Of a DNA stretch of 64,000 nucleotides, positions 31,001-63,968 are shown one piece after another. The notes under the pieces were generated by a model. That model saw only the letters and a program-made list of their open reading frames with translations. It did no database searches and was not told the DNA's origin. Every line of letters begins with the position of its first letter. The stretch's first letter is position 1. This DNA comes from Setoptus koraiensis (taxonomy: Eukaryota > Animalia > Arthropoda). The position numbers and the translations under genes were made by a program. The stretch lies in NCBI GenBank assembly GCA_048013815.1, contig CM106586.1, forward strand, positions 20,026,001-20,090,000, read 5' to 3'.

Positions 31001-32037
31001 TTATTATCATAGAAGAGGATCTTGATGTGGCCAACGATTTTTTTGTTTATTTTAATCAAACTATCAATCTACTCGATAAAGATCCTAGTTTGTATTGCAT
31101 TTCCGCTTGGAATGACCAGGGATACGATCACACTTCGAGAGACAACAGTCTGTTATATAGGGTAGAGTCCATGCCTGGTTTAGGTTGGTTACTTCAAAGG
31201 CGATTATACAAGCAAGAACTGGAGTCGCGTTGGCCCTCGGTTGACCGTCAACATGACTGGGACATGTGGATTAGGACTCCGGATGTAAGAAAAGGAAGAG
31301 AATGCATTGTACCTGACGTGTCTCGCACCTATCATTTTGGCTCCAAGGGAATCAACATGAATTCATATTTTCAAGGGCAATACTTTAGCAAGCACGCCAT
31401 CAATATGATACCACAATACAATTTTAAGAATGTGGATCTCATGACTGAGCACGCTTACGAGGATAGTATCATCAACTTAGTGAAAACAGGACATGTGATA
31501 ACGGAGGCTGATATGAATTATTCAGACGCCACGACAATTACCGACAATCGAACAGCCACAATCAGGGCTTCATCACCATCAACAGTAGCAGCATCAGCTT
31601 CCTATTCGACTGGTAACAGGGAAAAGTTTGCAAAATTTCTCTGTTCTTTAGCTAACGCAGACGACGATCAACTATCATCGAGTGCGGCCTTCCATTATGC
31701 CATCAGTCCCTCGCGAGGCATAAAGGGATCCAATGGAATTGAAAAGCAGGCAGCGACTAAAGTAGCCAGCAAAGAACAACACGCTGATTCTAGTTTAATT
31801 TCTGCTGAGCCCAAAATATCAAATGTGATATTTATAGATATGATTGACCACAACAATTTTACTACTTGGTTGAAACTAGCTAAATGCTGGCACATCTGGG
31901 ATCTTGATGCACGTGGACAGCATAAATCAATGTGGCGACTCTTTCTCAACGGTCGACACACGCTTGTCATTGGTGTACCTGCATCGCCATATTCTAAACT
32001 GATGCCATCTAATATAGTGCCATTTCGTTTTATTTGA
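28080..32037 (+). CDS. POMGNT1: Protein O-linked mannose beta-1,2-N-acetylglucosaminyltransferase 1 (GT13). Proposed exons 28080-28100 (may extend to 28056 or have further upstream exons), 28346-28427, 28559-30606, 30715-32037
   Basis: Spliced model gives MLAQLFK|SLFLATLFITFVVNIMFLVG (type II TM), a stem/ILEI domain (GRGIHLIVLNE, RDMWAMV, YGSVCDC) and a GT13 catalytic domain (MASNRPYYL, ISQHYRASL, IIEEDLD, CISAWND, MPGLGW, WDMWIR, PDVSRTYHFG). All introns are GT-AG and phase-compatible (0, 1, 0). The 5'-most exon is uncertain. Confidence 0.92.
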
Positions 32038-33486
32038 ATCTGATCACAAAGGACAATCACTCACTAAATCCAATTAATATTTACTGTAATCCTAATTATG
32101 ACATTAGTTTTTGTTTAAGTTACTTCAATAAATCCAGTTATTTTATTAACTCCTTTACTGTAATAATGCAACTTCCGGCTAGATGAATGATTCCTGCTTC
32201 AATGTGGAGACTCTCCACTGGAGAGTGTGGAGAATCTCCGCTGAAGATGCACGAATTTTTGGGTTCACTTGTTTTGAATATGGCGCGCTTCTGTACGTTA
32301 CAACGGGTTCTTCGCCATGCAAAACGTTAATCAACGAAAGTTGTTCATGTGATAAAACAACTCTGGGATGTCGCGACTCGCGAAGGAGATTCTTTGGATC
32401 TGACATCACCACAGCTGATCGAGGGGCAAACTTTTCAATACAGAAGAGACCAATTAAGTCAGCGCAAACAATTGATTGTTTTCTGGCCACTGTCCAGTAC
32501 AGATTTAACGGGGAGTTCGTGCAATATTTTACAACGTAAGCCACTGGCGAGCAGACACAAGTAGCATGAACAAGACTTGGTTACACTATGCAAAAGAGAT
32601 GCTGTGATGTATTGCGAAAAAGATATGATCTATCGAGGTCACGATAAGACGCTTTGCTCTTGGCATAAAAACATATCCAAAGAGCCGACTGTTGAGCCGA
32701 TCGTCGCACTCGTAATTGGATGAGTGGCCCTGCGCCAATTGAATTGTATCCGCTTACAAGTGTATAAGAATATTTCATACTTTCTCATCCAAAGAAGAGA
32801 GATATCTACGTTTTGTATGTCTATGGGTTTAAGGGATACATTCATTTAGATGGATTTGTATAATGGATTGTGTATTTTTCATACCTGATGCGCTGTAAAC
32901 AATTGATTTCGGGCTCCAAATTCGAATAAAAAGAACAGACAGACGAACAGACAGACAGACCGCCGCACATACTTGCGCCCAGCCTAGCATAATTTTGTTT
33001 TGTGCTATGACTGTGACTGGGCGTCACGTATAGAGTAGTCAATAGAAAGTTGATCTTAATATTTATACAAATGTATACATTATTACTAATATAAATATAA
33101 TATATTATTATGAATTATATATTAAATAAATATATATATATGTATATTATCACAATCATACTATCTTCACGCAATCATAAGCAAAATGATGTCTTTTCTG
33201 ATTAGAATGAGAAATGATTTGCTACCAGAGATAAGGGACACCATCATTATTACTAACAAGCAAACTGGGATTTGGAGCTAACATCACTATTATCGCTATT
33301 ATTATTATCTCATCATCATTCATGCTACTATTATTATCGTTGTCATCATAATTAACAGTACATCATACATCATTAATAATATTGCCGCTACTAGCACAAC
33401 ATTATCTCTATTATAAAACAATTTTATAGTTATTATTATTATTATTATTACATCAATCGGTTGGGCATCGTCCACAAAAACGCCTA

Positions 33487-35916
33487 ATGGTCAAAGCTCG
33501 ATCTCCCCATTCGCCCAAGTCACTGAACAATTGTCCAAGTCAGACTAAAAGATTGTGCGTACGTGGATCTTTAAGTGACAACAACGAGATCGACGACAAA
33601 TACGACACTAATCAAGGACAGTCAAGTGCAACTACCATACAGCCAAATAATACCGCAATTTCCACGGAAAATACAATGACGGCTAATGGCAGTATTTCAT
33701 TGGACTCTGACAATCGTGATTTCATTGGGCAACTTTACGACAATCTGGCCTCTAGTCATGAAAAATGTCTAGAAGCGCTAGAATCGTTAAAGATTTTCAC
33801 AATAGCTTACAGTAAAAAAAAAGATTTAGTCACAGAACGTGGTTTTATACCAAGATTGCTGATAATATTACAAAATAGCGAGTATGATACTCAAATTAAA
33901 ACTCAAATAGCGCTTATATTTAATAGTCTAGCCAAAGAGACTGAAATACCACTAAAGACACTATTGGAGAATAATGTTCCAGCGCACATAATCAACACAA
34001 TGATGACTTACCAAAATGACATCAACTTAACAGATGCATGCCTCAGGTGCTTGAGATCATTGTTTATCTATGATTTTATTGATACTCAACTTTTACTAGG
34101 TCACATTGATGAGAATGGCGATAATACAACAGTAGGGTCCAACACACAACAACTGGATCGGTATAAACTATTACAGTTCACACCATCTAGTGTGCTGCAG
34201 TACATGATCAATTTAGCCTCATCCACGAGATCTGGAGACATTCAAGAGTGTGTTGCCACCATCCTCGCTCATTCTTGTCAAACTTATGAACATCAGACCA
34301 TATTATGCAATTCGTTGGCCATAGATTGTATAGTTAAGCTATTACAAACCCCATACTACACCGTTAATGTGGCAGCTCTCAAGTGGTTGGCAAACCTTTG
34401 CTACAAGAACGAGGCTATTTCCACTCTAGTAGCACAAACTAAAACAGATAGTGATGAATCTATTCTTGATATTCTCATTAAAAAAATGGATAGGGACAAC
34501 ACAGATGAGATACAATTTTTATCAGCCAAATGCTACACTTTCATTAATCGGGCTGCCATAGCTATAATGCAAAATGACAAAAGAATAATATTCTGGGTTC
34601 TACACACACTGGTTCGTATGGTCAAGAAAGACAAGCACCCTCAATTGAGATCAGATGCCGCAGATTGTATAAGTTACTTGATTGAGCCAGACGTTTACAT
34701 GCAACAAACAGCAAGCATTTGCGACAATCTCATTTCATCACTATTTGATATGCTATCATGTAAACCAGATAACCTTGACTTGACGCAATTTAGGCCACTC
34801 TCGGCGCCATTGAAATCCCTCAGTTGGAATGAAGCCATACCACCAAGACCTGTCTTTGATCTAAGGTCGTCACTAGGTCTAGCATCTTCAAGTAATTGTA
34901 GCATTATGCGCGTTGAGGTATGTAATAAGAATTTCCGATTATGCCAAGAAATGAAACAAGCGTCATTTAAAGCCTTTGCCGCACTCAGTGCCAACGATGA
35001 AGACATCAGAAGAAGAATCATGTCGGTTGAAAACTACAACATAATGACTTATGTAGTAGAGGGACTCTCCGATGGTGGTAACGTCAAAACAGTTTCAGAA
35101 GCGCTATGCTGTTTGCACAGTTTATCTAGATCAGTTCAACAATTGAGGACCTCATTTAATGAGAGTAACGTCTGGACTTCGCTCAAGTATCTCTTAAATA
35201 AAACTTCGGACGAAGTTCTCATATTAGTCTCGTCAACATTATGTAACCTTCTATTGGAATTTTCCCCCGGCAAGCAACACTTTCTTGACCAGAAAGCAAT
35301 CGAATCGTTGTGTAATCTAACCAGAAGACAGAATGAACCAGCGCTTAGATTGAATGGTGTTTGGGCTTTGATGAACATGGCATTCCAAGCAGACCAAGAA
35401 ACTAAATCTCAGATATTGACCTCTTTGAGTATTGATCAAATCTTCAGGCTCCTACAAGAACGTGATGTTGAGATACTCCTCAAGACTTTAGGTCTCTTAA
35501 GAAACTTGCTATCCGAGAAAGCTCACATCGAGACTATAATGGCGACTTACGGGAAACAGATAATGCAAGCAGTTATAGGTGTTTTATCGGGAGATCACCC
35601 TGTGGAGGTTCAGGAGCAAGCCTTGTGTATATTAGCTAACATAGCCGATGGGGATACAGCTAAAGAGTTATTCATCATGTCAAATGATGAAATTTTGCGT
35701 AAATTGTCAAGTTATCTTGTGGGTAATCATGTTAAACTTCAACTAGCGGCCATATTTTGTATCAGCAATTTGGTGTGGCGTGCTGACGAAGGCTCCAAAA
35801 AACGTCAAGAGGTCCTTAGGCGCATCGGTGTCCACGGGCTTCTTCATAAATTGATTAATAATTCTGACAGCTCAATATCGAATCGAGCAAGAACAGCTCT
35901 CGACCAGTTTATTTAG
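33487..35916 (+). CDS. ARMC8: Armadillo repeat-containing protein 8 (CTLH/GID complex subunit); single exon, 809 aa
   Basis: Armadillo repeats with ARMC8-typical strings AFKAFAALSANDEDIRRRI, CCLHSLSRSVQQLRTSF, LCNLLLEFSP, LRLNGVWALMNMAFQA, EQALCILANIADG. Confidence 0.93.
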   Translation: MVKARSPHSPKSLNNCPSQTKRLCVRGSLSDNNEIDDKYDTNQGQSSATTIQPNNTAISTENTMTANGSISLDSDNRDFIGQLYDNLASSHEKCLEALESLKIFTIAYSKKKDLVTERGFIPRLLIILQNSEYDTQIKTQIALIFNSLAKETEIPLKTLLENNVPAHIINTMMTYQNDINLTDACLRCLRSLFIYDFIDTQLLLGHIDENGDNTTVGSNTQQLDRYKLLQFTPSSVLQYMINLASSTRSGDIQECVATILAHSCQTYEHQTILCNSLAIDCIVKLLQTPYYTVNVAALKWLANLCYKNEAISTLVAQTKTDSDESILDILIKKMDRDNTDEIQFLSAKCYTFINRAAIAIMQNDKRIIFWVLHTLVRMVKKDKHPQLRSDAADCISYLIEPDVYMQQTASICDNLISSLFDMLSCKPDNLDLTQFRPLSAPLKSLSWNEAIPPRPVFDLRSSLGLASSSNCSIMRVEVCNKNFRLCQEMKQASFKAFAALSANDEDIRRRIMSVENYNIMTYVVEGLSDGGNVKTVSEALCCLHSLSRSVQQLRTSFNESNVWTSLKYLLNKTSDEVLILVSSTLCNLLLEFSPGKQHFLDQKAIESLCNLTRRQNEPALRLNGVWALMNMAFQADQETKSQILTSLSIDQIFRLLQERDVEILLKTLGLLRNLLSEKAHIETIMATYGKQIMQAVIGVLSGDHPVEVQEQALCILANIADGDTAKELFIMSNDEILRKLSSYLVGNHVKLQLAAIFCISNLVWRADEGSKKRQEVLRRIGVHGLLHKLINNSDSSISNRARTALDQFI

Positions 35917-46209: not shown

Positions 46210-48104
46210 ATGGGAAACTGTCTTGAGACAAGCGATAAACGTGCCAGTTTAGGCAATCACGTCAGTCCGAACAACAAAAATTCCAATTCAAATTCGTTCA
46301 CTAGCAATGAATTCAATCAGCAACACCTAAATAGTGGTGCTGGAAAAACGAAAAGAAACTTCAGTGCCAACAATCACATTATTAACAATAATAACAATAC
46401 ACAGCACCATAATATACCCGACCTAATGACTGGCGATATACCCATCACTCCCCGCCAATTATCATGCGTGATGGGATCATCTAATCCAACGCATATGTCG
46501 CCTCATGAATATCCACTTCAGAATAACAGTCAATTGTTGAACAATGTCTCACAAATGGGAGAATCTCATCCAAACTTCTTCTCACAACGTTTCGCTCAAC
46601 AACAAGCCTCTACATTAGCCTCATCTGTGCTAACGAAGGGACCGGGTGACCAGAAATTAGTCATATGCTTGGATGACTTCTCGGCTAAAAGTGAGAAAGA
46701 GCTTAGCTTTCGCAAAGGCGATTATCTAATTGTCTTAGACGAAACAGGCCCAGATTGGTATATGGCCGAACATACGACAACAAATAGGAAAGGGTTTGTA
46801 CCCAAAGACTTTGTCACTACGGAATTCATTGAGATTGAGGATTGGTTCTTTCCCAAGACAATGCGCCGAGATGCTGAAAAGTTGCTTATGTCCCACGACT
46901 TCTGCAGTGGCACTTTCCTCATAAGAAATAGTGAACAAACAAACACGGGTTATTCTTTATCTATTAGAGATAGAGATTCACAAAAAGGCGATGTTGTTAA
47001 ACATTACAAAATCAAAACATTAGATAATGGAGGATTTTATGTGACGACAAAAAAGAAGTTCGCCAATATGAAGGAGTTGATAGACTTCTATTCTCAGGGA
47101 CCCAATGGGTTGTGTCATAAATTGGTGATGCCATGTCCTAAGCCAAAATTGAGCTTTTGGCCAGACAGAGAGGCTGAGATAACTCGTACTGATCTGCAAT
47201 ACATACGCAAGATTGGAACAGGTTTCTTCGGCGAAGTCTACTATGGCAAGTATCGAAATGACACAGAAGTTGCCATCAAGACATTGAAACAGGGTAAAAT
47301 GTCACCTCAAGCCTTCCTCGATGAAGCCATTATCATGCGCAAATGTCGTCATCCAAAATTGGTACCTTGTTATGGTGTGTGCTCACAAGAGGAACCATTA
47401 TTGATTATTACTGAATATATGTGTAATGGTAGTTTATTAGATTACCTCCGATCCAACAGAGAAGGTAAAAATCTTAAGCTATTAGAATTGATGGATATGG
47501 CTTCACAAATCTGCTCTGGAATGGCCTATTTGGAGCAACAAAAATTGATACATCGTGATCTTGCTGCAAGGAATATACTTGTGGGGAAGGATAGAATAGT
47601 TAAAGTGGCCGATTTCGGCTTAGCGAGAGTCATTGAAGATACAGAGTATACCGCGCGTCAAGGTGCCAAATTTCCAATCAAATGGACAGCGCCAGAGGCT
47701 GCTATGTATGGAAAATTCTCAATCAAATCCGATGTTTGGTCGTAAGTTTTCAAGTTCCAGCAAATGCTCTGATTGCTAAAATGATTATAAATTTTTAACT
47801 CTTTCTAACCTACCTATTCCTTTGCTTAAATGACAGATTCGGCATTTTACTCTACGAACTAATCACTCACGGTCATGTGCCTTATCCTGGTATGCATAAT
47901 AAAGAAGTTATAGAAAAAGTAGAGCTAGGATACAGGATGCAAAAACCTACTAATTGCGAGTGTCCAGATCCCGTTTACCAAATAATGCGTAAGTGTTGGG
48001 ATGGAGAACCAGATAGAAGACCCACATTTGAGTATTTGTATAGATTCTTCGACGATTACGTAGTGTCGAGTGAGCAGTCTTACAGAGATCCTGTGGAATT
48101 TTAG
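46210..48104 (+). CDS. Src64B: Src-family tyrosine kinase, Src64B-like; exons 46210-47741 and 47837-48104
   Basis: MGNC N-terminus (myristoylation/palmitoylation); SH3 ([16 protein letters not shown]); SH2 ([27 protein letters not shown]); kinase ([33 protein letters not shown]); phase-2 intron in SDVWS|FG; C-tail Tyr (EQSYRD). SH2 and tail resemble Src64B more than Src42A by recalled sequence. Confidence 0.92.
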
Positions 48105-48105
48105 A

Positions 48106-48571
48106 CTTGTTGTCACATGCTTAATGTGATAATCATTAACTGTTGGAATATGTGTCAATCTATACTTGAGATAAAATGGTGTTCAATCGACACTTGCTAT
48201 TCAACTCAAATCAAAGAACAATTATGACTCTTACGGTTATTACGGTCAATTGTAGGCTGAGTTGCAGTATGCTAAAACCAACAACTTTTTAATGATTATA
48301 TAATATATAAATTACACTTTTTTACAAACTCACATGATGTCTATCCAATGCGGAGATAGACTGATGACAACAATCAATCTAGTGTAGACCAGTTTTATCG
48401 TGTTACTTGTTTTCACAGTTTTCTAGCTCTTTATACAATCGGTCAACATGATCTTTGGGCAACATATCATTCATGGCCTTTATGGCTTCTTTGATACGTT
48501 TGTATGGTAAGTTTAATTCTACCATGTAGTTGACAATGCCAGGGAACCTTTCGATGGTGTCGGATGGTCGC
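48106..48571 (-). repeat. Non-coding duplicate of the last ~55 codons plus 3' UTR of the CRAL-TRIO gene (copy of 54209-54655), with a 1-bp frameshift
   Basis: 48306-48544 is identical to 54389-54627 (239 bp); the flanks are diverged; AGGGAA versus AGGGGAA deletion. The apparent ORF 48403..48591 starts at TTG, not ATG. Confidence 0.95.
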
Positions 48572-48641: not shown

Positions 48642-49706
48642 CTATTTTGCTAGCATGGCCTCCACCATAGCTTGGCCTTTTTTCTTGATGTAATCATCTA
48701 TGAATTGTCTATTCCAGCCATCATTATCCCTAGTTGGTCGGCCGTCTACCTTCAGCGCCGAACTCTGGGGCCTGTAAAATTCTTCAACAGCCTTTAATAG
48801 CTTCTCACTTGGTACAGTTGGTGGTGGAAGACGTAGTTGATCGGGATTTATTGGTTTGTATTCACGGTCTGCCAAGCCAATCAGAGGTACCATGAGCCCG
48901 GCGGGTAGCTCATAGTAGGGTACGCCAGGTTTGAGCCCTTCTTCGCTGATGTTTTTCATTGTCTCCTGAATTACATTGCCAGTCTCCTTAGAATCTATTG
49001 GCTGTACCACAGAGGTGTTTCTGGATTGGTCGGTTGGATTAGCACCATGCTGATTATCAGCACATGCTCTGGTAGCATTATTGCTTATAGAATTCGATCC
49101 ATTTTGTGCACCAGGAACCATTGAGAATATTTGAGAATTTGGTGTTGATGTAGATTGAACTAAACCAGCTTGCTGGTTCATATTATTAATCAAATCGTTT
49201 GATTGTGCAAAGTGATACGGAGGATGTCTGACGTTCATAGGAGGTGGCAATAAGGACGGTTGCATGTGCTGTTGATCCATAACCTGGAGCATCTGAGGAT
49301 ACCATTGTAGATGTTGCATAGGATTCCTCGAAAATTGTTGTTGTTGAGGTGGTAAAATGTGTTGCACAAGCATATTTTGTTGGTGATGTTGGGGATACAT
49401 CGGCATATTTGTTTGCTGTTGGTGCCGATGTCCAGGCGGATGGAGCTGGTGTGGGAGCAAACCGAAAGGTTGCATGCCTAAATGGCGCTGCTGTTGTTGA
49501 GGGTGCATGTTTGGCTGATACTGCTGGTTGTAAATATTATTAAATAGTTCTGGATTGAACTGCCTCACTGGGGTTGCCTGCTGTTGATGCTGGTGGATTT
49601 GCATGTTATGCATGGTTTGATTCCTCAGCATATATTGTTGTTGCTGCTGTTGTTGATTCATCATACCCCTTATTATATTGTTTGAACCTGGATTGTTGCC
49701 AGACAT
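48642..49706 (-). CDS. CHERP: CHERP/SCAF6-related protein: Q/P-rich region plus DUF3819 only; single exon, 354 aa
   Basis: PYYELPAGLMVPLI...YKPINPDQLRLPPP..PSEKLLKAVEEFY...RDNDGW matches the recalled CHERP DUF3819 segment. No SURP, CID, RS or G-patch domain is seen. Confidence 0.8.
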   Translation of the reverse strand: MSGNNPGSNNIIRGMMNQQQQQQQYMLRNQTMHNMQIHQHQQQATPVRQFNPELFNNIYNQQYQPNMHPQQQQRHLGMQPFGLLPHQLHPPGHRHQQQTNMPMYPQHHQQNMLVQHILPPQQQQFSRNPMQHLQWYPQMLQVMDQQHMQPSLLPPPMNVRHPPYHFAQSNDLINNMNQQAGLVQSTSTPNSQIFSMVPGAQNGSNSISNNATRACADNQHGANPTDQSRNTSVVQPIDSKETGNVIQETMKNISEEGLKPGVPYYELPAGLMVPLIGLADREYKPINPDQLRLPPPTVPSEKLLKAVEEFYRPQSSALKVDGRPTRDNDGWNRQFIDDYIKKKGQAMVEAMLAK

Positions 49707-50119: not shown

Positions 50120-53100
50120 ATGAAGGTGAGTTATTCGGAAAAGAAAAGAATCTTGTTCAAGTTCGAAACACCAAAACTCTCAAAGCCAGATTCTCATGTC
50201 GCCAAAATTTTCACCACTCATCCTCGCTCTGCATTTTTGATAGCATTTGGCAAGAATTCTAGATAACAATCCACAGGGTCGATCTTATATCACCTGGAAT
50301 CCCAAGGACAGCGATCAATTACTTTTGGTTCGGTGCGATCAAGAGAAAGTGCTTGTGAGCATCTGTGATAAAAATGGTCTGATCGTATACAACAAGAACC
50401 TAAAATCAGAAGGGTAAATGATATATAACTAGACAATGCCATATGAGATCGATTATCACTATCTATAGTTACTAATTGACAAATTGCCCCACAAATATCT
50501 CCATTCATCAGCGTATGCCATCAAGTGGCCTGGAATAAAGATGGCAGCATGCTGGCACTGTTATTTGGCACAAACAAGCGCCATGTATCTCTGTGGAGAT
50601 TCGACAGTTCAAATACTATTGTTGTTGCAGAACAAACGAAATGTCTAGGATTTATGACAACATTGTCCTGGTCTAAATTAAGTAACATGCTGGCAATAGG
50701 ATTGAGCAGTGGTCAGTGTTGGTTGTATAACGGGGATTGCGGTACTAGAAGTCACATGGAGGTGAATAGTCTCATGCATCCGGTACTGGAATTGTTTTGG
50801 TGCGACATGATAGATATGCTGGCCATGGCAGGCAAATCAAATGAAATATCATTGACCACCATGGAGAATATTGGTAGCTATTATCATAGTGTAGAGGTGG
50901 GCAATTTCAGATCTGTTAAATTCTCGTCTATTCCACACCAAGTTATGGCAGTTGTTAGGGACAATCAAGATAGCATGGTCAATTTGTTGCGAACAGAAAG
51001 TTACATATGGATGAGCTTTGTTGATAAGTCTCATGTTCTAATATTTAAACCAATTCAAATTGTTGATTCCGTTTACGATGAAAAAACATTGAAACTATGT
51101 AAATCAATTCGAATTGATTCAAATGACTCCGATATAATCTCTATGCCAATAGTGATCAGTCACATAGTTGATTATTATTGGTTGGACTGTCGTCATCTCA
51201 TAATAGCTCATAAGACGGGCTACATAGTTATTGCTACCATAGACAAGTTTAATAGTAGAGCGGAGCCAACACAATTGTTTTATATCAACGAAGAAAACCT
51301 GGTAGAATTAGATGTATTTGTTGGCAATAGAGAAGATTCTGCTGGTTACGAACTGAGGTCACTACAATTGTACAAGTTCCCCCTTGCGTCCAATCGACAA
51401 AAGTATCCCATTTTCACATTGGCAATCGGTCAAGCTCACTCAGTAATGATACTGGACGTGTATTCAGCGTACTCGCCGGACCAAGATCATTCACATGACA
51501 GTTATGTATTGGAGAAAGTGGACTATTTAGATTTGAAAAATATACTTCGAAAATTGTCGGCGGAAATAAAATCTCTCAATTGGTCGCCCGATGGAAGACT
51601 ATTGACGGTGCAACTGACCGATGGTTCAGTTATAATCGAGCGTGTTCGATTGGCCTCAATAATGTCACACTCATGCGGAACGCGATTGGCCTATCTGTCC
51701 GATGATAAAGAAGTGACGATCATAAAGCACCAGCAGGAGAGGAAAATGCAAATAACTAGTTCGACTGGTACTGGTGATGCGCAAACAAGACAGCAAGACG
51801 ACTACACTTTGGTCAATATAATCACTCTAGACGTCCACTTTAGTTATTTGGCGGTGGGACCTCTGCATTTGGCCGTTGTTTTCAACCATCGCATCTGGTA
51901 CTATATGACCTCTCAGTCCACCACCAGTGTTGCACTTATCAATCAACGTGATTACATCTCAATTGTATCGTCGGTACAGTTAAACTCAAATATGGCGGCC
52001 GTTCTTTTTAGTGACGGCCGATTACAATTGCACTCAGTGCAAGCCTTGAGAGGTGTGCCTATCCAGTCGAGCTCTGGTCACTTGTCACTGTCTAACAATC
52101 AAGAAGATATTAATAACGAAATATATATAGACAGAGAGCGTTTCTTTCCCGATCCGAGTAGCGCTAGACAAGAAAAGATTGTTTGCTTTGCGCTAACTGA
52201 GAACTCGCTTATCTACTCCACTGATATGGGACGATTGGTCACATTCAGCTTGAGACGATGGAAGACAATTCAAACGTATGTTCATTCTGACGCCAACAAC
52301 AATCTACGATCAACAACAAATGATCCCAGCAACAACACTTCATCGAGAATAGCGTCCATGAATATCTCTAGAAACCACTGGCACAATCAACAGCGTAATA
52401 CTAATACGGTATACTTCTCCAAAATAGTACCTAATACAAATGGGACCTTGCTCATTTTGATTGACAACACTAATCAAGCCTTTGTTTATTACCCATTGTG
52501 CGACACTATGGTTAATTTTGTCGCTAACAACTCAGATATGTTTGATAAAATTGTTGATAATAACGACAGTTCGCACTCTGCTCAAATATCTACTTTTGGC
52601 TCATTTAATCAAATGGACATTCTCTGGGAGCACAATGGATCGGAATTGAATTACGGCAAAACGTTTATTGCTGTTGATGAATCCAAAATTCATGTGTTTG
52701 TCTATTGGTTCGACACACTGATTGGTCCAATGGTCCGCTATGTGTCTAGCATAGCGAAAGCCATAAGTCACAATGTATTGATTTTCTCCAAAGGCACGGT
52801 GGGATGTCAAACAAACATTGGCAAGCTGTTCAATATGATCCTCGATTGTCATGATGACGATAAAATGTTGGCGGTGCTGGAACGTGATCTAAGCGATTTG
52901 GTGAACAACTCTAGACAGGCAATAGACAGAGGTCATGATGTCGGGGATGAGTTTAACAAATCTCAGATTGAGTTGAAAATGAGATTCATCAAGACGGTTG
53001 CGAAATTGAAACCCCAAACGAATTTGTATGATATATGCGAATACTTGACCACGGACAGATCCTTCAATCCTCAGCTGAAAGAGACACAACAGAACGAGGA

Positions 53101-54184
53101 AGACAGCAGTCTATTAGACAATCAATCATTGCAACAATCGCCAGTATCATCAAATGACGCCCTTTGGGAATATCTGGCCAGATTTTCATTGTTCATGATG
53201 GACTTACGTATGGCTATGAGAATTTATCGTAAATTGGAAAGAATTGATGTTGTCGAAAGTTTGCAGCAGATACGAAGGCCAGATTTGATGTTTGGCTGTG
53301 ACGACAAAAACGTTGTCTGTGCCCACATTGCAATGATACTCAATTTGAAAGAATTAGCACAGGAAAAACTGTTGATATGCCCGAAGAAAATGCGTGTTCA
53401 GATTGTAGAACTATCTATTTATTATAGCGAATGGGATGAGGCCTTGCATTATGCAAAGTTGTTCGACAAAAACAAGTTGCCTCTGATTTATTACAAAAAG
53501 GCTTTGGATCTCGAGGTGGAAGATGAGGAGTACAAGTTGGCCTACGAGGATTATTCCAAGTCCTACAACATACTCAAAATATTGAACTATACCTATTTTG
53601 ATTTTAGATTTTTCCATTTGTCCTACAAGAGTCTGGCCGGAATGGCACGATGCCTGGTTCAACTCAAGGAATACGATAAAGCTTACGATTTGGCGCGAGA
53701 TAAATTGGTGCCATTGTACCTGAAGGAATGCTCCAATGACGGTGACTCGCAACTGCTCAAAGATTACATTGAAGATCTAGCAAAATCATTTACAGAATCC
53801 AATCAATTGGACAAGGCTGCTCACTTGTATTCCGTAATCAAGGATTACAATTCAGCCGTCAGATACAAGCTGTTGATCAAGGATATGGATGATGTAGATG
53901 AAGATACCATCAGCCAATTGTCCGATCAAGCAATTCTGCTCGACTGCTCAAAGCATTTTCTATTCGAGACGCCCCCGATAAGATCTATCAGCATACTAGA
54001 GAGAATATTGCATTTGCAACAATTGCATGGTAAACAATTGAGCAATGTGAATATCGTCATGGAATTGGTATCTCTCGTGCTTATCAGGCTAAACGATCCC
54101 ACTTACGCAATGAAACTCGCCAGAAAATACGAAAACCAGGAGGCCGTGGAGAAGGTGTTGAATTTCCTGAAGCAGCCCAGGTAA
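50120..54184 (+). CDS. WDR19: WD repeat-containing protein 19 / IFT144 (IFT-A core); exons 50120-50125, 50244-50413, 50512-54184; C-terminus appears short
   Basis: ATG AAG|GTGAGT micro first exon, then phase-compatible exons giving MK-HLARILD...ITWNP...GVCHQVAWNKDGSMLA. WDR19-like strings WSKLSNMLAIG, LNWSPDGRLLTV, LAVGPLHLAVVFNHRIWYY, VSSVQLNSNMAAVLFSDGRLQLH; then a TPR-like helical region. Confidence 0.88.
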
Positions 54185-54485
54185 CGAAAGAGTCCGGGCA
54201 ATTTTATTCTTGTTGTCACATGCTTGTTGTGATAATCACCAATCGTGTATCGATTTATACTTGAGATAGAACGGTGTTTTATCGACACTTGCTGTCAAGG
54301 AATATCATGACTCTTACGTTTATTACGGTCAATTGTAGGCTAGGTTCTAGTATGCTAAAACCAACAACTTTTTAATGATTACATAATGTATAAATTACAC
54401 TTTTTTACAAACTCACATGATGTCTATCCAATGCGGAGATAGACTGATGACAACAATCAATCTAGTGTAGACCAGTTTTATCGTG

Positions 54486-55493
54486 TTACTTGTTTTCACA
54501 GTTTTCTAGCTCTTTATACAATCGGTCAACATGATCTTTGGGCAACATATCATTCATGGCCTTTATGGCTTCTTTGATACGTTTGTATGGTAAGTTTAAT
54601 TCTACCATGTAGTTGACAATGCCAGGGGAACCTTTCGGTGGTGTCTGATGATCGCGTTGGCACGTGCCACCTAGAAAATCGGGACAATTTTCTTTCTCAA
54701 CATAGTTGAATATCTCTGAATCAGATATGAACATCACTACATCGCGCCTCTCGGGCGGGATGAGACGCTTAGCCACAGTCCAAGCTGCTGTGAGGACCCA
54801 GGGAAAATTTATGGCAAGAACATAGTCTAGATTGACGGGGAAGTACTCTCGAAGTAAAGTAAGGAAGTGCATGAGAAGATCGAGATCGTAGTTATTCCAT
54901 CCTGTGTTGGTCAGGTCGAAGATTACGGCCCAGCTATTTCCATTGCAACTGTCATCCACAAGGTACATCAAGTAGCACAGATAGCTGAACAGAAAAGCGA
55001 GGTTACTTGATTAATAATGACTTTGTTTGAGGAATTGATGTTAGCCCGGGCGCCTCACGGAAGCAAGGAGTAAGGGGAAGATAGAAGAAAAGTTAACTCA
55101 CTCTTTGAAAGATGATTTCAAGTCCGGTATATTGCGTAACATGGCGGTTCTGATGTACAGAGTTCTGTTTTGAAATTTATCAGGCTCATACAAAAAGGCC
55201 GCACCGCACATATAATACTCTTTTGGGAATGCATCCAGAGATAACTCTCTTATTTTTCTCTCTTTTCGCCACTTAAGAACATTAACTAGCATTTCTAATG
55301 ATTCTTGTACATTTTTACGTTTCACTATTAGGCATCTTTGCACGAGAAATTCCATATTTTCAACTTGCTTCACATCTTCTTCATAAAAGAGTTCAGGTTG
55401 TTGTTTGTAGTGATCCTTCAAGAACAGGTCACGTACCTCTTGAACGTGCTGACCGTGAGGTTCGCGCAGCCTAGGCAACTTGTTGAAAGGCAT
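54486..55493 (-). CDS. CRAL-TRIO (Sec14-like) lipid-binding protein, MOSPD2 N-terminal type, without an MSP domain; exons 55493-55102 and 54984-54486 (296 aa)
   Basis: LKWRKE, FPKEYY..GAAFLYEPDK, VIFDLTNTGWNNYDLD, YFPVNLDYVLAINFPWVLTAAW, CPDFLGGTC; phase-2 GT-AG intron. Confidence 0.9.
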
Positions 55494-57339: not shown

Positions 57340-57977
57340 CTCTGTTTTGTCGTCATTGAAATTGTCGACACAAGGACGCAAAGAATGACTTGCCATTATG
57401 ATGCGTCGCAGTCAACTCGGGTTGATTAAACCTTTATCATGTACGAGTGAGAAAAGTTTATGGTCTTATATTATTCTATCAAGCGATATCAAACTATAGG
57501 TCAAAAGCAGGATCACATAATTTTCATATAAGTCAAACAATTTTCCCGAAAATTGATTGCTTGATTACTTGGTTGAGAGGGTCTTCAACGCAGCAAGCCT
57601 AATCAACAATTGAATATGAAGTAACAAGGATTTTCGTGAATCACGCACAGTTGTGAATAAGTAACTTCAATGGCCTAACAAGGCATGCAAAAACGTTTTT
57701 ATTAAGTTATTCAAAAATTTTTCATTCAAGAAGTCATCTTTAAAAGGATTATATGTAATAACATATATACTAGAGAAATATGCTATTTTTTCTAGTCTGC
57801 TTATCTTCATGGTTTGTCCAATGTTAATGCTCACTATTGATGTATCCTGTCTATCCTGCTAATGATATCACCCAATGGCTGCACTATCAAGTCGATTGCG
57901 ACTTTTATTTGATTGTGATGAAAGATGAGTAAATACAATGGACAGTCAATCAAGCAACTCTTAATGGAACGATGATA

Positions 57978-59238
57978 TCATATTTTATTATTAACTATTA
58001 ACGACACCGAATGGTTGACATTGATTCTTGTTGGTGAATCTCTAGACAATAGATAGGCAACGTTGTGATTGATCAGACCGATTGCGACTAAATTATTAGA
58101 AAAAAAAAAATAAATTAAATTACATAGTAAATTATTATAAAAAAATAACATGTTCAAACAAATGTATTCTATGTAGGGGGTCAAATTTGATTTCTGGAAA
58201 AGTGCCTCTGTCTTTCCACACTTATATCATGAAGACAAAAAAAGAAACATTGGAAAAAAACTCATAGAATATATTCATGTTAGTCAATTTCGTTAATACT
58301 TACCCTCATTTTCGGCACCTCGTGGTATGATCATATCAGCATATTTTTTTGTTGGTTGACAAAATTCTTCGAAGGCAGGTTTGACAAATTGGTTATATTG
58401 ATTGAGAACTGTCTCTAGTGGACGGTGCCTCTCTCTTACATCCCGAACAACTGTCCAAAAAAAGATTTATAGTAACAATGGGGGGAGAGATAGAGAGACA
58501 GTGTGAGTAATTGCTTTCGTCACGTCGTTCGCCTTATCTGAAGAAAGAATAGTTTCCAGAATATACTCACCCCTTCTAGACAATCGAGTGTCGGAATCTG
58601 TATCTACAAATAATTTCATATGAAGAAGATCTCGAACTTGTGGAAAATAGAAGATGAGCACTCCCTCAAATAGAACTACATCAGCGGACTGAATTTCATA
58701 ATAGTCGTGTTCATTATGGCTATTCTCTGAATAGTCGTAGTTTGGCAGACGAACTTTTTTACCATCTAGAATATCTTTGAGTGTTTGTATCATAGCTTGT
58801 TCATCGATTGCGTCCGGATGATCAAAATTGAAGCAGCCCTTCTTCGCAAGTTGAGATTCTTCGTTAGTTAGTTTCCTGTAGAAGGAACTCTGTTTAATAA
58901 GTGCCACTCTCCTCTGGCAATCCTGTCCCAATTTTTCCATTATTTTGCGACAAACAGTTAACTTGCCTATAATTATATCGGTAAAAAAAGTGTGTGCTTA
59001 TAGATTAGATTTCAATAGATAGCAAACAAAATCAAATGCGAAAAGATAATAAACTGACTCACCGGCAGCAGTTCCACCGGCTTTATGTTGGAGCACAGAT
59101 GAGATATTAAGGATGAAGAAGTTGGTGTTAAACAGATAATAGATTTATAATTTTAATACTCTCACTTCGCGGACTAGCAATCGTGCTTTGTTTATTCTCA
59201 CCTACTCCGATGAGGAATGGTCTGGTTCTCCGACTCAT
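57978..59238 (-). CDS. UCK: Uridine-cytidine kinase homologue (probable pseudo-enzyme); exons 59238-59202, 59080-59063, 58966-58571, 58450-58304, 58087-57978 (235 aa)
   Basis: Spliced translation PFLIGV|AGGTAA|GKLTVC...QSSFYR...FNFDHPDA...DVVLFEG...[16 protein letters not shown]|VVRDVRER...[28 protein letters not shown]|VAI; 708 nt in frame; GT-AG introns. Confidence 0.93.
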
Positions 59239-60301
59239 TTCTCTGGTAGTTAGATGAATTTCTAAATCGTTCAACAGGGCTCGAATGGGTTTCTTCGTAG
59301 CTATGCGCGGACTAGCTTGGACTCATATTAGGCGATGGACGATATCAATATTGTGAGAAAACAGTAGCGATAATAATATTTGTTGATATTTAATTAATGT
59401 TGATAGTTTAGATTTCCATGATTATAATAATATGGGACACGATATCCTTAATGATTATGAGAAGATTGACTATTCTTGAGAATCGAATACATCGCATGAT
59501 GTCCAACCGATTGCGAGGTCTATGGGTTTACTACGACTCATCGAACGATACAATTCATCGACATACTACGGTACAGTTCGCTTCAACAACAAAACGTTAG
59601 TAAACAAGATTATACCCTCTTCAGTTAGCAAAGTTCGCGCAGGGGGTATAATCTATGAAGTTGAGGCCGCTTCAACGTGTTTGTACCCCCCTTCATCCAT
59701 GGATACTAATCTACTATTCGCAGGCTTAATGGTGCATTTTTCAAACTCTCGCGGCATGCGTGTAAGTTGGAACGTTCGTTATAACCATTTACATTTTTTT
59801 GCAACAAGATTCAATTTTACCGCTGAAAGAACAAGTGAAAACATTGGAAACGTGATCTTCTTACCATTCGTACGGATTTGACTGTCTTATCATATGATTT
59901 ATTCGGCCCTGACAAATGAACAATCTTCCCACCATCAATAGCGGAATCCTATCTGACTTGAATGAAAAATGATTTGTTACGAGAGATAAGAGATATTATT
60001 TGGCAAAGTTGGAATCGACACAATTGAAGCTACTAATATCAAATCATTATTTATACTATAATCATCACCACAATTGAAACAATCAACTCTCATTGAACAC
60101 CATTATACTATCACTTCTATTTATATCACAATCCAATTATTACACTCACCTTTAATATTATTATCAGTATTGACATCTTATACTTATAATTATTATCACA
60201 ACAATTCGTTGGGCATCGTCCACATAAAGCTAATTGTTAGAGCTCGATCTCCCTATTCGCCCGATCATCCCCTATTTTCTCCCTCTCCTAAATCTACCGC
60301 T

Positions 60302-61645
60302 ATGTCTACTCCCATCTCCTCCTCCACTTCTACCACGACTGCAGTCTCTTTGTCTACATCGGCTTCTATAACTACACCTGCTCCGAGTACCCTTCCTTCT
60401 TCTACTTCTGCAACAACAACCACAACAACAACAACAACTACGACAACAACAGCAACAACAACCACAACAACTGCAACAGTTGCTGCGATAGCTTCACCAT
60501 CAAAAACTGCGATCGCACCAACAACAGTCGCTCCAGCTTCAACAACAACCGTGTCAGCAACATCAACAACTGCTTCTCCAACAATAGCAACCTCTTCGGC
60601 ACCAACAACAACCACTTCCCTTGCAACAACAACTGCTTCATCAGCAGCAACAACCCCTTCAGCACTAACAACAACAATCAAAACAACAACGACAGCTACA
60701 ACAGCTACCACACCAACGACAACAACCTCCACAATAGCGGCAACCCCAACACCGACACCTGCATCATCAACAGCAACAACAACAGCGACACTAACACCGA
60801 CACCCACATCATCGACAACAGTAACAACAACACCAGCACTGATACTTACATCATCAACAACAACAGCACCATCAACTCAATTATTGGTGACTTCCAAATC
60901 GACCACCAGAGCCAGCGCTCTTACTTCATCGATTGTACACACAGAAGCGCAACCCGCTATCGGCTCACCCCATTTGGTGGCCACTCCAAAGACAACTACC
61001 GCCGCCACCGTTGTCTCGGTGGCGGCCACATCAGCTGTAACTTCAACTCCTTCAATTTCCGTTATTACCACGGGAAATCATCAAATTCTTACTAATCTAA
61101 AACCTCACCAGCAGGTACCCCATCCGCAGTCTCTGCAAGCTCAGACGCCTATCGGATTGGCGACGGCGAGTCAGGTCTCACTCCACCAATTGCATCAATC
61201 GACATCAAGCCCAGTTGTTGCAGCCTCATCAGCAGCGCCTTCTACCCCCATCACTCTATCTAATTCTTCAACTGTAACAACAGATTCTTCTAGTAAATCA
61301 AACAGTATCAAAACTTCAACTACTGTAGCCACCGCACCTATGCCGAAAACTTTCTCAGCTGTTATCCAATCGCATCAACAGCATAAGCAAAGCCCACAAA
61401 CTGTACTTATAAGTTTAACAACTAAACCAAATGCTACTACATTACAACAAATACAACATTTACAGACATCTCTGAATCACCCAGCGCAGCATTCATCGAC
61501 ACCACCGTTGAATTCCGCCATGCCCCAAACATATTCAGTTTATGCGCAACAACAAAATCAACCTCAAAACACTACTCAAGTTGTTCAATTGGTGACCAGT
61601 CAGCAACAACAGATACAATCTCAACAATCCCAACAACAACAGCAA

Positions 61646-61680
<35 letters not shown>

Positions 61681-62434
61681 ACAACAACAACAGACTAAAG
61701 CACAATCCTTCAAATATATCTGTTGTCTGCAAGAGAATGGAGTTCGATGCGAACGTGCTGCCGGTAATGCATCATATAGCAGGCGCGTGCAAAAAACTGT
61801 AGGCCTGAGAAAACTTAATTATACATTGGATCCGGATGTAAGACATGCCTATATTTGTGAATATCACAAGACTGTTATTCAATCTGCTAGGAAATCTCCT
61901 GCTCATGCAAGAGAAATACATGCAGCCACCACTGCCACAGCTGCCAATCGAACCAATTTCAATGATGTATCTACCATAAACGCCAGACAGCAGAATGTTG
62001 GATTGCTCAGCCACCATCAATTGAATAATCATGGAATCACACCGGTGACACCCAACAGCCCCTCTGTAAGGGCGGCTGCTGCTGTTGGGTATTCTCACTA
62101 TCCAGGACCTAGTTTGGGACCCATCGATGCTTTACCTCCTAGTCTTGATAACGGCGACACCGGATCATCAACCAGTAGTGCCATGGATGTAGATCTCTAT
62201 CAATTACAGGTTAATACTTTGCGAAGATATAAACGCCACTTCCGTGTACAAACTCGTCCAGGTTTGAACAAGTTACAATTAGCCGAGTCTTTGAAACGAC
62301 ACTTCAAAACAATGCCCATCATTGAGAAAGAGGCTATCACGTACTTTGTTTATATTGTAAAGTGTAAAAAAAACAAGTTAGATCATAATCTTAAAAATTC
62401 TAATGCATCCAGCCAAATGAACAATGATGACTGA
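60302..62434 (+). CDS. SAP30: Sin3-HDAC corepressor subunit SAP30 with a very long Thr/Ser/Ala- and polyQ-rich N-terminal extension; single exon (first ATG 60302; the frame is open from 60074)
   Basis: Zinc-finger CCLQENGVRCERAAGNASYSRRVQK...HAYICEYHK; Sin3-binding domain VDLYQLQVNTLRRYKRHF...TRPGLNKLQLA...HFKTMPIIEKEAITYFVY. Confidence 0.93.
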
Positions 62435-62966: not shown

Positions 62967-63468
62967 ATGGCCCAATCATGTAATCAAGTGAATGTAACAC
63001 CTGAAGAGTTTGCCGTAAGTATCCACGCTTCGAACAATAATATTCAATTAATGAGAAAATTTCCCCTTCATATTCCTACTATCTGATGGACCTTTTTTCT
63101 CTGTAGCATCTTATGCATTCCATTTGTGATAATCTGGACTGTAGCAAGGAAGGTCTAAGGGACGTAATCCGCTCTAAGGCGAGAGAATCCGTCAAGACCA
63201 AACAAGGGTATTTGTCCACTACGCCACTTAGTATAGTAAAGAAAGTCATCTCATCAGGAAACATATATATATCTGACGAAGACAAGGATGACCTCTTAAA
63301 GAATCTCATAAACACTCACGATGTCAGAGACAATGTATACGAAGGAGGATTTAAAACTTGGGAAGGTTCAAAAGACCTCGTCACCTTCTTGGATAGTAGC
63401 CAAGTCTTAAAAACCATATTGGAAAAAACAGAGACAATTAATATCCTCGAACTTGGCGCAGGATCGGC
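62967..63468 (+). CDS. METTL18: Histidine protein methyltransferase 1 (METTL18/Hpm1 family), 5' part; exons 62967-63014 and 63107-63468+, 3' part lost in the gap (not in the supplied ORF track)
   Basis: Manual translation: MAQSCNQVNVTPEEFA|HLMHSICD...HDVRDNVYEGGFKTWEGSKDL...ILELGAGS. YEGG.K.WE plus SAM motif I is typical of the family; GCC|GTAAGT donor and TTTCTCTGTAG acceptor, phase 0. Confidence 0.85.
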
Positions 63469-63968
63469 NNNNNNNNNNNNNNNNNNNNNNNNNNNNNNNN
63501 NNNNNNNNNNNNNNNNNNNNNNNNNNNNNNNNNNNNNNNNNNNNNNNNNNNNNNNNNNNNNNNNNNNNNNNNNNNNNNNNNNNNNNNNNNNNNNNNNNNN
63601 NNNNNNNNNNNNNNNNNNNNNNNNNNNNNNNNNNNNNNNNNNNNNNNNNNNNNNNNNNNNNNNNNNNNNNNNNNNNNNNNNNNNNNNNNNNNNNNNNNNN
63701 NNNNNNNNNNNNNNNNNNNNNNNNNNNNNNNNNNNNNNNNNNNNNNNNNNNNNNNNNNNNNNNNNNNNNNNNNNNNNNNNNNNNNNNNNNNNNNNNNNNN
63801 NNNNNNNNNNNNNNNNNNNNNNNNNNNNNNNNNNNNNNNNNNNNNNNNNNNNNNNNNNNNNNNNNNNNNNNNNNNNNNNNNNNNNNNNNNNNNNNNNNNN
63901 NNNNNNNNNNNNNNNNNNNNNNNNNNNNNNNNNNNNNNNNNNNNNNNNNNNNNNNNNNNNNNNNNNNN
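63469..63968. other. Assembly gap (500 N)
   Basis: Run of Ns; the round length suggests a placeholder size. Confidence 0.99.

What the first reader, a model, noticed from the sequence alone, without database searches (positions are those of the whole stretch)
33460..33516. Shared 5' leader/start-codon module, copy 1: overlaps the ARMC8 ATG and recurs at SAP30
GTTGGGCATCGTCCACA-AAAACGC-CTA-ATG GTC AAA GCT CGA TCT CCC CAT TCG CCC (33460-33516) aligns with 60208-60262, 27 kb away in front of the unrelated SAP30 gene. The first block is 17/17 identical and the second 29/33, in the same orientation, both after an ATT-rich tract. It supplies the ARMC8 start and the peptide MVKARSPHSP, which is absent from the animal ARMC8 N-termini I recall. 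Inference: a portable promoter/5'UTR/N-terminal cassette reused by unrelated housekeeping genes. It could be a translational-control element, a shared SP-rich phospho-tag or a domesticated tiny mobile element. I know no described element that matches it.
Basis: partly seen in the sequence, partly recalled or inferred. Interest (0 to 1): 0.8.

Follow-up and report, generated by a model that had tools for sequence, protein, structure and literature searches.

The report
SAP30 re-headed by ARMC8's front end
In this tiny-genome gall-mite-like genome, about 380 bases from the front of the ARMC8 gene (upstream region, leader, start codon, first 10 codons) were copied 27 kb away and replaced the original front of the unrelated SAP30 gene, which is a real but known kind of gene patching and not a mobile promoter cassette.

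Summary
Window 33134/33160-33516 and 59887/59920-60262 are collinear homologues: about 360-380 bp, 65% identity, E 2e-26. Two blocks are about 87% identical, and a decayed AT-rich spacer lies between them.

Only two copies exist in the window.

The direction is most likely ARMC8 to SAP30:
- **ARMC8 owns the start.** Its ATG at 33487 is the only in-frame ATG ahead of a mite-conserved SQTKRLCVR motif. A relative, P0070, shares the MVK start and its DNA context.
- **SAP30 received the copy.** In a close relative (locus L005) and in Fragariocoptes setiger, SAP30 has its own ATG and N-terminus. Homology to them starts right at the 3' end of the copy.
- **The fusion was in frame.** The copied ATG is now ATT, so SAP30 probably starts at the conserved Met at 60302.

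I found no transposon hallmarks, no Rfam match and no significant RNA fold.

The scan noted the same kind of event (not this sequence) more than ten times elsewhere in this genome.

Verdict: a new member of a known kind (5'-end capture, chimeric gene). Interest is moderate.

The parts
33134..33516 (+). Copy 1: ARMC8's native upstream region, leader, start codon and first 10 codons. This is the likely source of the duplication.
   Evidence: Collinear homology to 59887/59920-60262. The left edge is fuzzy (33134-33160). The right edge is sharp at 33516.
33196..33245 (+). Block A, copy 1: upstream conserved block, about 87% identical to 59951-60000. It holds a small ORF starting at 33207.
   Evidence: Function is inferred (upstream promoter element or uORF) and not tested.
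33457..33516 (+). Block B, copy 1: an invariant 17-mer (33460-33476), then ATG 33487 and 10 codons (MVKARSPHSP).
   Evidence: Where the two copies differ and L007 can be compared (ATG, AAA, CCCCAT, and CGCC against L007's CGACC), copy 1 is identical or closer to L007 (read).
33487..35916 (+). ARMC8 coding sequence, intronless, 809 aa.
   Evidence: ORF. ARM repeats in Pfam. Tick ARMC8 is the best hit at 43% identity, E 1e-163.
33538..33564 (+). Codons for SQTKRLCVR, an N-terminal motif conserved in related mite ARMC8 proteins. They show that translation must begin upstream, at 33487.
   Evidence: Differences from relatives are mostly at synonymous third positions.
59887..60262 (+). Copy 2: the copy of the ARMC8 front end that now heads SAP30.
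   Evidence: It is absent from the SAP30 upstream region of the close relative L005 and from F. setiger locus L006.
59951..60000 (+). Block A, copy 2, with a small ORF starting at 59962.
60205..60262 (+). Block B, copy 2: the 17-mer at 60208-60224, with ATT (60233-60235) where ARMC8 has ATG. It is in frame with SAP30.
   Evidence: 60302 minus 60233 is 69 nt, or 23 codons.
60263..60301 (+). Remnant of SAP30's native N-terminal coding sequence (DHPLFSPSPKSTA). It is now probably leader sequence.
   Evidence: Protein alignment with L005 starts here, PLFSPSP against PSLSPSP. L005's first ~18-20 codons have no counterpart in the window.
60302..62434 (+). SAP30 coding sequence from its first ATG. 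This Met is conserved in L005 and in F. setiger.
   Evidence: Pfam zf-SAP30 and SAP30_Sin3_bdg..
59277..59346 (-). It is not a copy of the module.
   Evidence: Its score is within the background and a long alignment gives z of about 2.4. Most of it aligns with L005's UCK upstream sequence, which lacks the module-like words.

Best explanation
This is a one-off capture of a 5' end. A segment of about 360-380 bp, holding ARMC8's proximal upstream region, leader, start codon and first 10 codons, was copied in direct orientation to a site 26.7 kb downstream. There it replaced SAP30's own start and first ~18-20 codons and fused in frame. SAP30 is therefore most likely now transcribed from a copy of the ARMC8 promoter. 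The copied ATG later mutated to ATT, so SAP30 translation most likely starts at the conserved internal Met at 60302. Two blocks stayed about 87% identical while the rest decayed to about 55-60%: block A at about -290 to -240, and block B from -30 to +30 around the ARMC8 ATG. They are probably the working cis-elements (an upstream element, and a core promoter with leader) kept by selection at both genes. Shown here: the homology, its boundaries, the replacement at SAP30, and ARMC8's use of the ATG. Inferred: promoter function, the position of the transcription start site, the copying mechanism, and SAP30's present start codon.
For: Homology: E 2e-26; score 106 against a null of 21.7 +/- 4. SAP30 is the recipient. 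The close relative L005 (about 86% nucleotide identity in the CDS) has an uninterrupted 701-aa SAP30 ORF starting at its own ATG, with a stop codon just upstream. Alignment with the window begins at about 60263-60269, within two codons of the module's end. F. setiger SAP30 (P0016) also starts MA... and keeps the internal M-S-T-P. Neither block occurs in L005 or L006. ARMC8 is the owner. ATG 33487 is the only in-frame start upstream of the conserved SQTKRLCVR. P0070 (locus L007) begins MVK plus an S/P/T-rich extension and shares CCTAATGGT around the ATG; its ATG-centred match is 13 of 24, tied for top among 2888 ATG sites, and it ranks near the top in a gapped scan. In the tree the window branches first, then P0070, then the MYA-start clade (support 79/92), so the MVK head needs one change if it is ancestral and two if it was gained twice. 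Conservation is uneven: the best two 40-column windows hold 69 of 80 matches, reached in 9 of 5000 column permutations. Earlier unchecked scan notes report many similar re-headings in this genome.
Against: SAP30's native promoter could persist upstream and simply read through the copy. The ARMC8 locus of the closest relative could not be found. Similarity to L007 covers only about 25 nt plus the peptide, and P0070 sits on a long branch. A weak match of both copies to L005:3836-3887, about 260 nt upstream of L005's SAP30 ATG (score z about 2.9; E 0.04), could mean that some of the AT-rich part is native to SAP30. I read it as low-complexity similarity. A simple tandem duplication would put SAP30's head on ARMC8's body, not the reverse, so an insertional or template-switch copy must be assumed. 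Genome-wide copy number is unknown.
Confidence: 0.68

Rival explanations
1. Reverse direction. The module is SAP30's native head and was fused onto ARMC8, for instance by a tandem duplication with breakpoints in both gene heads followed by loss of the redundant copies.
For: A tandem-duplication junction naturally joins a downstream gene's head to an upstream gene's body, and the two copies are in direct orientation. The SP-rich peptide resembles SAP30's S/T/P-rich N-terminal region. Seven relatives start ARMC8 with M[YH]A directly before SQTKRLCVR. There is a weak match of both copies to L005:3836-3887.
Against: SAP30 in L005 and in F. setiger has a different start and N-terminus, and homology breaks exactly at the module's end. 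P0070/L007 ARMC8 shares the MVK start and its context. Tree order favours an ancestral MVK head in ARMC8. The SAP30 copy carries the derived state where the two copies differ and L007 can be compared.
Confidence: 0.1
2. Both copies come from a third source: a dispersed repeat or mobile promoter-bearing element, or an unseen donor gene elsewhere in the genome.
For: Neither block was found at the ARMC8 or SAP30 loci of relatives beyond the ~25 nt around the ATG. Only 64 kb of the genome could be searched. An earlier unchecked note describes a recurrent promoter module elsewhere in this genome.
Against: No terminal inverted repeats, no target-site duplication seen by eye, no tRNA-like head or Rfam family. 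Only two copies in the window. No metagenome match. A related eriophyoid genome is TE-poor, 1.54% in Aculops lycopersici (PMC7738191). The start context is shared with L007's ARMC8.
Confidence: 0.15
3. The copy at SAP30 is inert filler left by a rearrangement. It is not used as a promoter, and the well-kept blocks reflect patchy mutation or gene conversion rather than selection.
For: UCK is inverted relative to SAP30 between the window and L005, so this intergenic region was rearranged. The copied ATG is dead. The unevenness test is only moderately significant.
Against: SAP30 lost its own start and upstream coding sequence exactly at the junction and the fusion is in frame. Blocks at about 87% identity against flanks at about 55-60% are hard to get neutrally, including the non-repetitive left flank 33134-33196.
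Confidence: 0.07

Closest known systems
Chimeric genes and recruited 5' ends formed by partial gene duplication (for example tandem-duplication exon shuffling in Drosophila yakuba, PMC5460883; classic cases such as jingwei, recalled from my own knowledge)
   Same: The promoter, leader and first codons of one gene are joined in frame to the body of an unrelated gene by a DNA-level duplication that ignores gene boundaries.
   Different: Here the recipient appears to be the only SAP30 gene seen in the window, not a spare duplicate. The copy is dispersed (27 kb away, direct orientation) rather than a visible tandem junction. The captured start codon has since been lost, so what remains is chiefly promoter and leader.
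Other 're-headed' genes noted by this scan in the same genome (for example s1-330772, s1-318733, s1-303156, s1-342979; AI notes I did not check)
   Same: Same kind of event: a copy of another gene's upstream region, leader and first codons replaces a gene's own start. In some cases a sister species still shows the earlier state.
   Different: Most of those are flipped copies from an immediate neighbour. This one is direct, 27 kb away, and the copied ATG is dead. No sequence similarity to them was found.
MITE or SINE insertions that donate promoters
   Same: A short stretch of a few hundred bp recurs next to gene starts.
   Different: No terminal repeats, no target-site duplication, no tRNA-like head and no multi-copy family were seen. 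One copy is the gene's own ancestral start region.
Shared core-promoter motifs (Ohler-type motifs such as DRE or Motif 1 in arthropods; recalled from my own knowledge)
   Same: Short conserved boxes close to the start of housekeeping genes.
   Different: The similarity is a collinear alignment of about 360 bp with equal spacing of the blocks (262 vs 255 bp), which means common descent by copying and not independent motif instances. No further instances occur at other genes in the window.

Membership tests
5'-end capture / chimeric gene by partial duplication | Paralogous DNA homology between the heads of two otherwise unrelated genes | tested here: met
   E 2e-26; score 106 against a null of 21.7 +/- 4. 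The genes are ARMC8 and SAP30.
5'-end capture / chimeric gene by partial duplication | In the recipient, the homology boundary coincides with loss of orthology to the same gene in relatives | tested here: met
   Window and L005 SAP30 align from about 60263-60269 onward. L005's ATG and first ~18-20 codons are missing from the window. F. setiger also has its own head.
5'-end capture / chimeric gene by partial duplication | The donor's head is ancestral to the donor gene | tested here: met
   P0070/L007 ARMC8 shares the MVK start and CCTAATGGT context, tied for top of 2888 ATG sites. Tree order supports it. This rests on about 25 nt and one long-branch relative, so support is moderate.
5'-end capture / chimeric gene by partial duplication | The recipient uses the captured start codon | tested here: not met
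   The copied ATG is ATT at 60233. The fusion is in frame, but the first ATG is at 60302. This bears on the 'chimeric protein' label only, not on promoter capture.
5'-end capture / chimeric gene by partial duplication | The recipient is transcribed from the captured promoter | not testable with these tools
Mobile element (MITE/SINE) | Terminal inverted repeats or a tRNA-like head, and target-site duplications | tested here: not met
   No inverted repeat joins the ends of either copy. ARAGORN and Rfam found nothing. No duplication flanks the copies by eye.
Mobile element (MITE/SINE) | Many dispersed copies | tested here: inconclusive
   Two copies in 64 kb. None in seven related loci or in metagenomes. 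The rest of the genome could not be searched.
Recurrent core-promoter motif | Independent instances at many gene starts | tested here: not met
   No third instance above background in the window. 'Copy 3' is explained as native UCK sequence.
Structured RNA leader / translational control element | A stable or conserved secondary structure, or a known family | tested here: not met
   Fold z-scores are -0.25 to -0.66. No Rfam hit. A 6-bp TTGGGC...GCCCAA pairing flanks block B, but it is weak.

The most novel reading that the evidence does not exclude
This locus may be one instance of a lineage-wide habit. In eriophyoid mites with streamlined, frequently rearranged genomes, genes that lose their front end may be routinely patched with copies of another gene's promoter-plus-start module. 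Blocks A and B would then mark the minimal portable promoter (an upstream box plus a core and leader box about 260 bp apart) that selection keeps after each transfer.
Probability: 0.25. Interest if true: 0.65.

Novelty: new member of a known kind. Interest (0 to 1): 0.4.

Why it matters
It is a well-delimited natural case of a conserved, probably essential chromatin gene (SAP30) exchanging its promoter-proximal region and N-terminus for those of an unrelated gene. A close relative still shows the earlier state. Two islands of conservation mark the sequences that probably carry promoter function, in an animal group where no promoter has been characterised to my knowledge. Together with the scan's other notes, it adds to a possible pattern of frequent front-end replacement in miniaturised mite genomes. 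Taken alone it is an ordinary example of chimeric-gene and promoter-capture evolution.

Tried and rejected
1. I proposed that CCCATTCG at the 3' end of block B is an initiator and that transcription starts downstream of ATG 33487. This is rejected for ARMC8: SQTKRLCVR just downstream is conserved in relatives and 33487 is the only in-frame ATG ahead of it.

2. 'Copy 3' at 59277-59346 (minus strand) is within background and mostly native UCK upstream sequence.

3. Similarity seen by eye between L005's SAP30 start region and block B, and between an AGAGATAA...CATCATT stretch in L005 and block A, is not significant. It ranked 473rd and 1210th of 12470 windows.

4. The top-scoring block-like hits in relatives lie inside coding genes or match only one of the two copies, so I took them as chance. 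They are L005:7655-7685, L005:11591-11644, L005:13160-13243 and L001:11251-11380.

5. Transposon hallmarks, tRNA, Rfam and RNA folds gave nothing.

6. A coding reading of block A (small ORF MRNDLLPEIRD / MKNDLLREIRD) has roughly 5 of 8 synonymous differences. After allowing for six frames this is not significant, so it stays only a hint.

7. Exact-protein look-ups for window proteins found nothing on record. No close ARMC8 relative turned up in three protein searches.

8. A metagenome scan for block B gave 0 hits.

10. Flanks beyond the module show no further homology between the two loci.
Full report
**1. What is in the sequence**

The 17-mer at 33460-33476 recurs exactly at 60208-60224, and 33484-33516 matches 60230-60262 at 29 of 33 positions on the same strand. 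Shuffled sequence expects 0.17 and 0.00 such matches.

The similarity is much longer than reported. blastn with word size 7 aligns 33160-33516 with 59920-60262 over 367 columns at 65% identity, E 2e-26. A gapped local alignment starting near 33134/59887 scores 106, against 21.7 +/- 4.0 for block-shuffled sequence.

A second well-kept block lies about 260 bp upstream in both copies (33196-33245 vs 59951-60000). The spacing from block A to block B is 262 bp in one copy and 255 bp in the other.

Identity in 20-column windows is 16-18 of 20 in the two blocks and 8-13 of 20 elsewhere. The best two 40-column windows hold 69 of 80 matches, a value reached in 9 of 5000 column permutations.

No further homology exists in 4-kb flanks of the two loci.

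**2. How many copies**

A sliding local-alignment scan of the whole window, both strands, with both block-B sequences finds the two copies and then only background.

Its long alignment to either copy has z of about 2.4.

About two-thirds of it aligns at about 73% with the UCK upstream region of a related species (L005:500-580), where the module-like words are absent. I treat it as chance resemblance in native UCK sequence.

**3. The genes and the organism**

- 33487-35916 is an intronless 809-aa ORF with ARM repeats. Its best hits are ARMC8 of ticks, at 43% identity and E 1e-163.
- 60302-62434 encodes SAP30, with both Pfam domains.
- The best SAP30 relatives are a Logan contig at 98% amino-acid identity in the C-terminal 254 residues and about 86% nucleotide identity (locus L005, run SRR33593474), and Fragariocoptes setiger, an eriophyoid mite, at 63%.

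Together with the scan's earlier notes, this points to an eriophyoid (gall or rust) mite. Such genomes are reported as tiny, intron-poor and transposon-poor (PMC7738191).

**4. ARMC8 uses the module's ATG, and the head is native to ARMC8**

Nine mite-type ARMC8 proteins carry an N-terminal motif of the form S[QRK]TKRLCVR that tick and insect proteins lack (P0063 retains only its tail). In the window it lies at 33538-33564 and differs from relatives mostly at synonymous sites. The only in-frame ATG upstream of it is 33487. This killed my own idea that transcription starts at an initiator-like CCCATTCG downstream of that ATG.

Seven relatives begin M[YH]A immediately before the motif. P0070 (locus L007, run SRR33927463) instead begins MVKTPSSTQGNGA before the motif, and shares CCTAATGGT and a nearby CCCCAT with the window.

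- In an ungapped comparison centred on the ATG, L007's ARMC8 start matches 13 of 24 positions. That ties for first among all 2888 ATG sites in the fetched loci.
- A gapped scan also places it among the top few of about 1800 independent windows.

On a protein tree the window branches first, then P0070, then the M[YH]A clade (support 79/92). A window-plus-P0070 sister pair is rejected, p-AU 1e-5. With the outgroups rooting the tree, an ancestral MVK head needs one change and independent gain needs two.

Where copy 1 and copy 2 differ and L007 can be compared (ATG vs ATT, AAA vs AGA, CCCCAT vs CCCTAT, CGCC vs GC where L007 reads CGACC), copy 1 is identical or closer to L007.

**5. SAP30 is the recipient**

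In L005 the SAP30 ORF is continuous for 701 codons from its own ATG (L005:4147), with a stop codon immediately upstream.

Aligned with the window, homology starts at window PLFSPSP (about 60263-60269) against L005 PSLSPSP. That is within two codons of the module's 3' end at 60262. L005's first ~18-20 codons (MANPTPSTPILEGQSAV...) have no counterpart in the window.

F. setiger SAP30 also begins with its own MA... head and keeps the internal M-S-T-P that corresponds to window ATG 60302.

Neither block A nor block B occurs anywhere on L005 or L006 above background.

The copy is joined in frame: 60233 to 60302 is 69 nt. Just after the event SAP30 could have been translated from the ARMC8-derived ATG. 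That codon is now ATT, and no other ATG lies between it and 60302.

**6. How it most likely works**

Shown:
- a copy of ARMC8's front replaced SAP30's front;
- ARMC8 still uses the original ATG.

Inferred:
- the copy brought a working promoter;
- blocks A and B are the elements selection has kept in both copies (an upstream element, and a core promoter with leader);
- SAP30 now starts at Met 60302.

A TATA-like word lies about 25-50 bp upstream of the 17-mer in each copy (TATAAAA at 33412, TATAATTA at 60185). A transcription start in or just before block B is therefore plausible, but I could not test it.

The copying mechanism is unknown. A simple tandem duplication would give the opposite chimera, so an insertional or template-switch copy is more likely. 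UCK is inverted relative to SAP30 between the window and L005, so the copy may be linked to a local rearrangement.

**7. What it is not**

- No terminal inverted repeats and no flanking target duplication by eye.
- No tRNA or Rfam family.
- No significant RNA fold.
- No match in metagenomes or in the scan's own index.
- The peptide is not a shared tag, because only ARMC8 can translate it and the non-coding 17-mer is better kept than the codons.

**8. Limits**

Transcription, ATT fixation and genome-wide copy number remain open.
- The window's own proteins are not on record.
- No close relative's ARMC8 locus could be reached.
- A weak match of both copies to L005:3836-3887 is unexplained. I read it as AT-rich low-complexity similarity.

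**9. Comparison and novelty**

This belongs with chimeric-gene and promoter-capture events by partial duplication (for example PMC5460883).

The scan's earlier unchecked notes list more than ten similar re-headings in this same genome. The kind has therefore been found before on other DNA of this genome, but not this sequence. Those notes moved me from a dispersed-repeat reading to the capture reading, which I then tested independently with relatives.

It is a new member of a known kind. Its modest special features are a direct copy at 27 kb, a relative that still shows the earlier state, and a captured start codon that has since died.

Noticed in passing
window 48086-48571 and 54189-54655: A direct repeat of about 450-480 bp (300-nt core at 96% identity), 6.1 kb apart. 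It brackets a WDR19/IFT144-like gene (50525-54184) and a DUF7819 gene (48642-49706, minus strand). It is not an LTR retrotransposon, and is another local duplication of intergenic DNA. Already noted by the scan as s1-352527.
   Followed up: partly
window 57794-59268 vs L005:554-2518: The UCK gene is head-to-head with SAP30 in the window but in tandem orientation in the close relative L005. An inversion therefore occurred next to the site where SAP30's head was replaced.
   Followed up: partly
window 33207-33281 and 59962-60027: Block A holds a small ORF in both copies (MRNDLLPEIRDTII... / MKNDLLREIRDIIW...). About 5 of 8 nucleotide differences in the first 13 codons are synonymous. It could be a conserved uORF, but this is not significant after allowing for six frames.
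   Followed up: partly
window 33538-33564; proteins P0009, P0012, P0013, P0052, P0056, P0062, P0063, P0070: A conserved N-terminal motif, S[QRK]TKRLCVR, is specific to this group of mite ARMC8 proteins (P0063 keeps only its tail) and absent from tick and insect ARMC8. Its function is unknown.
   Followed up: no
window 32037-33134: An unusually long spacer (about 1.1 kb) upstream of the module, with overlapping ORFs of about 120 aa on both strands at 32179-32544. They have no Pfam match. It may be a decayed gene.
   Followed up: partly
window about 63460-63960: A run of 500 N (an assembly gap) just downstream of SAP30, inside the region orthologous to L005's Methyltransf_16 gene.
   Followed up: no
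L005:7655-7685: A stretch of about 28 nt inside the relative's Methyltransf_16 gene resembles copy 1's start region (GGTCAAA...TCTCCCCAT) but not copy 2. It is probably chance.
   Followed up: partly
window 33461-33466 and 33511-33516: Block B is bracketed by a 6-bp inverted repeat, TTGGGC...GCCCAA, kept with wobble pairs in copy 2. The predicted hairpin is not more stable than shuffles.
   Followed up: partly
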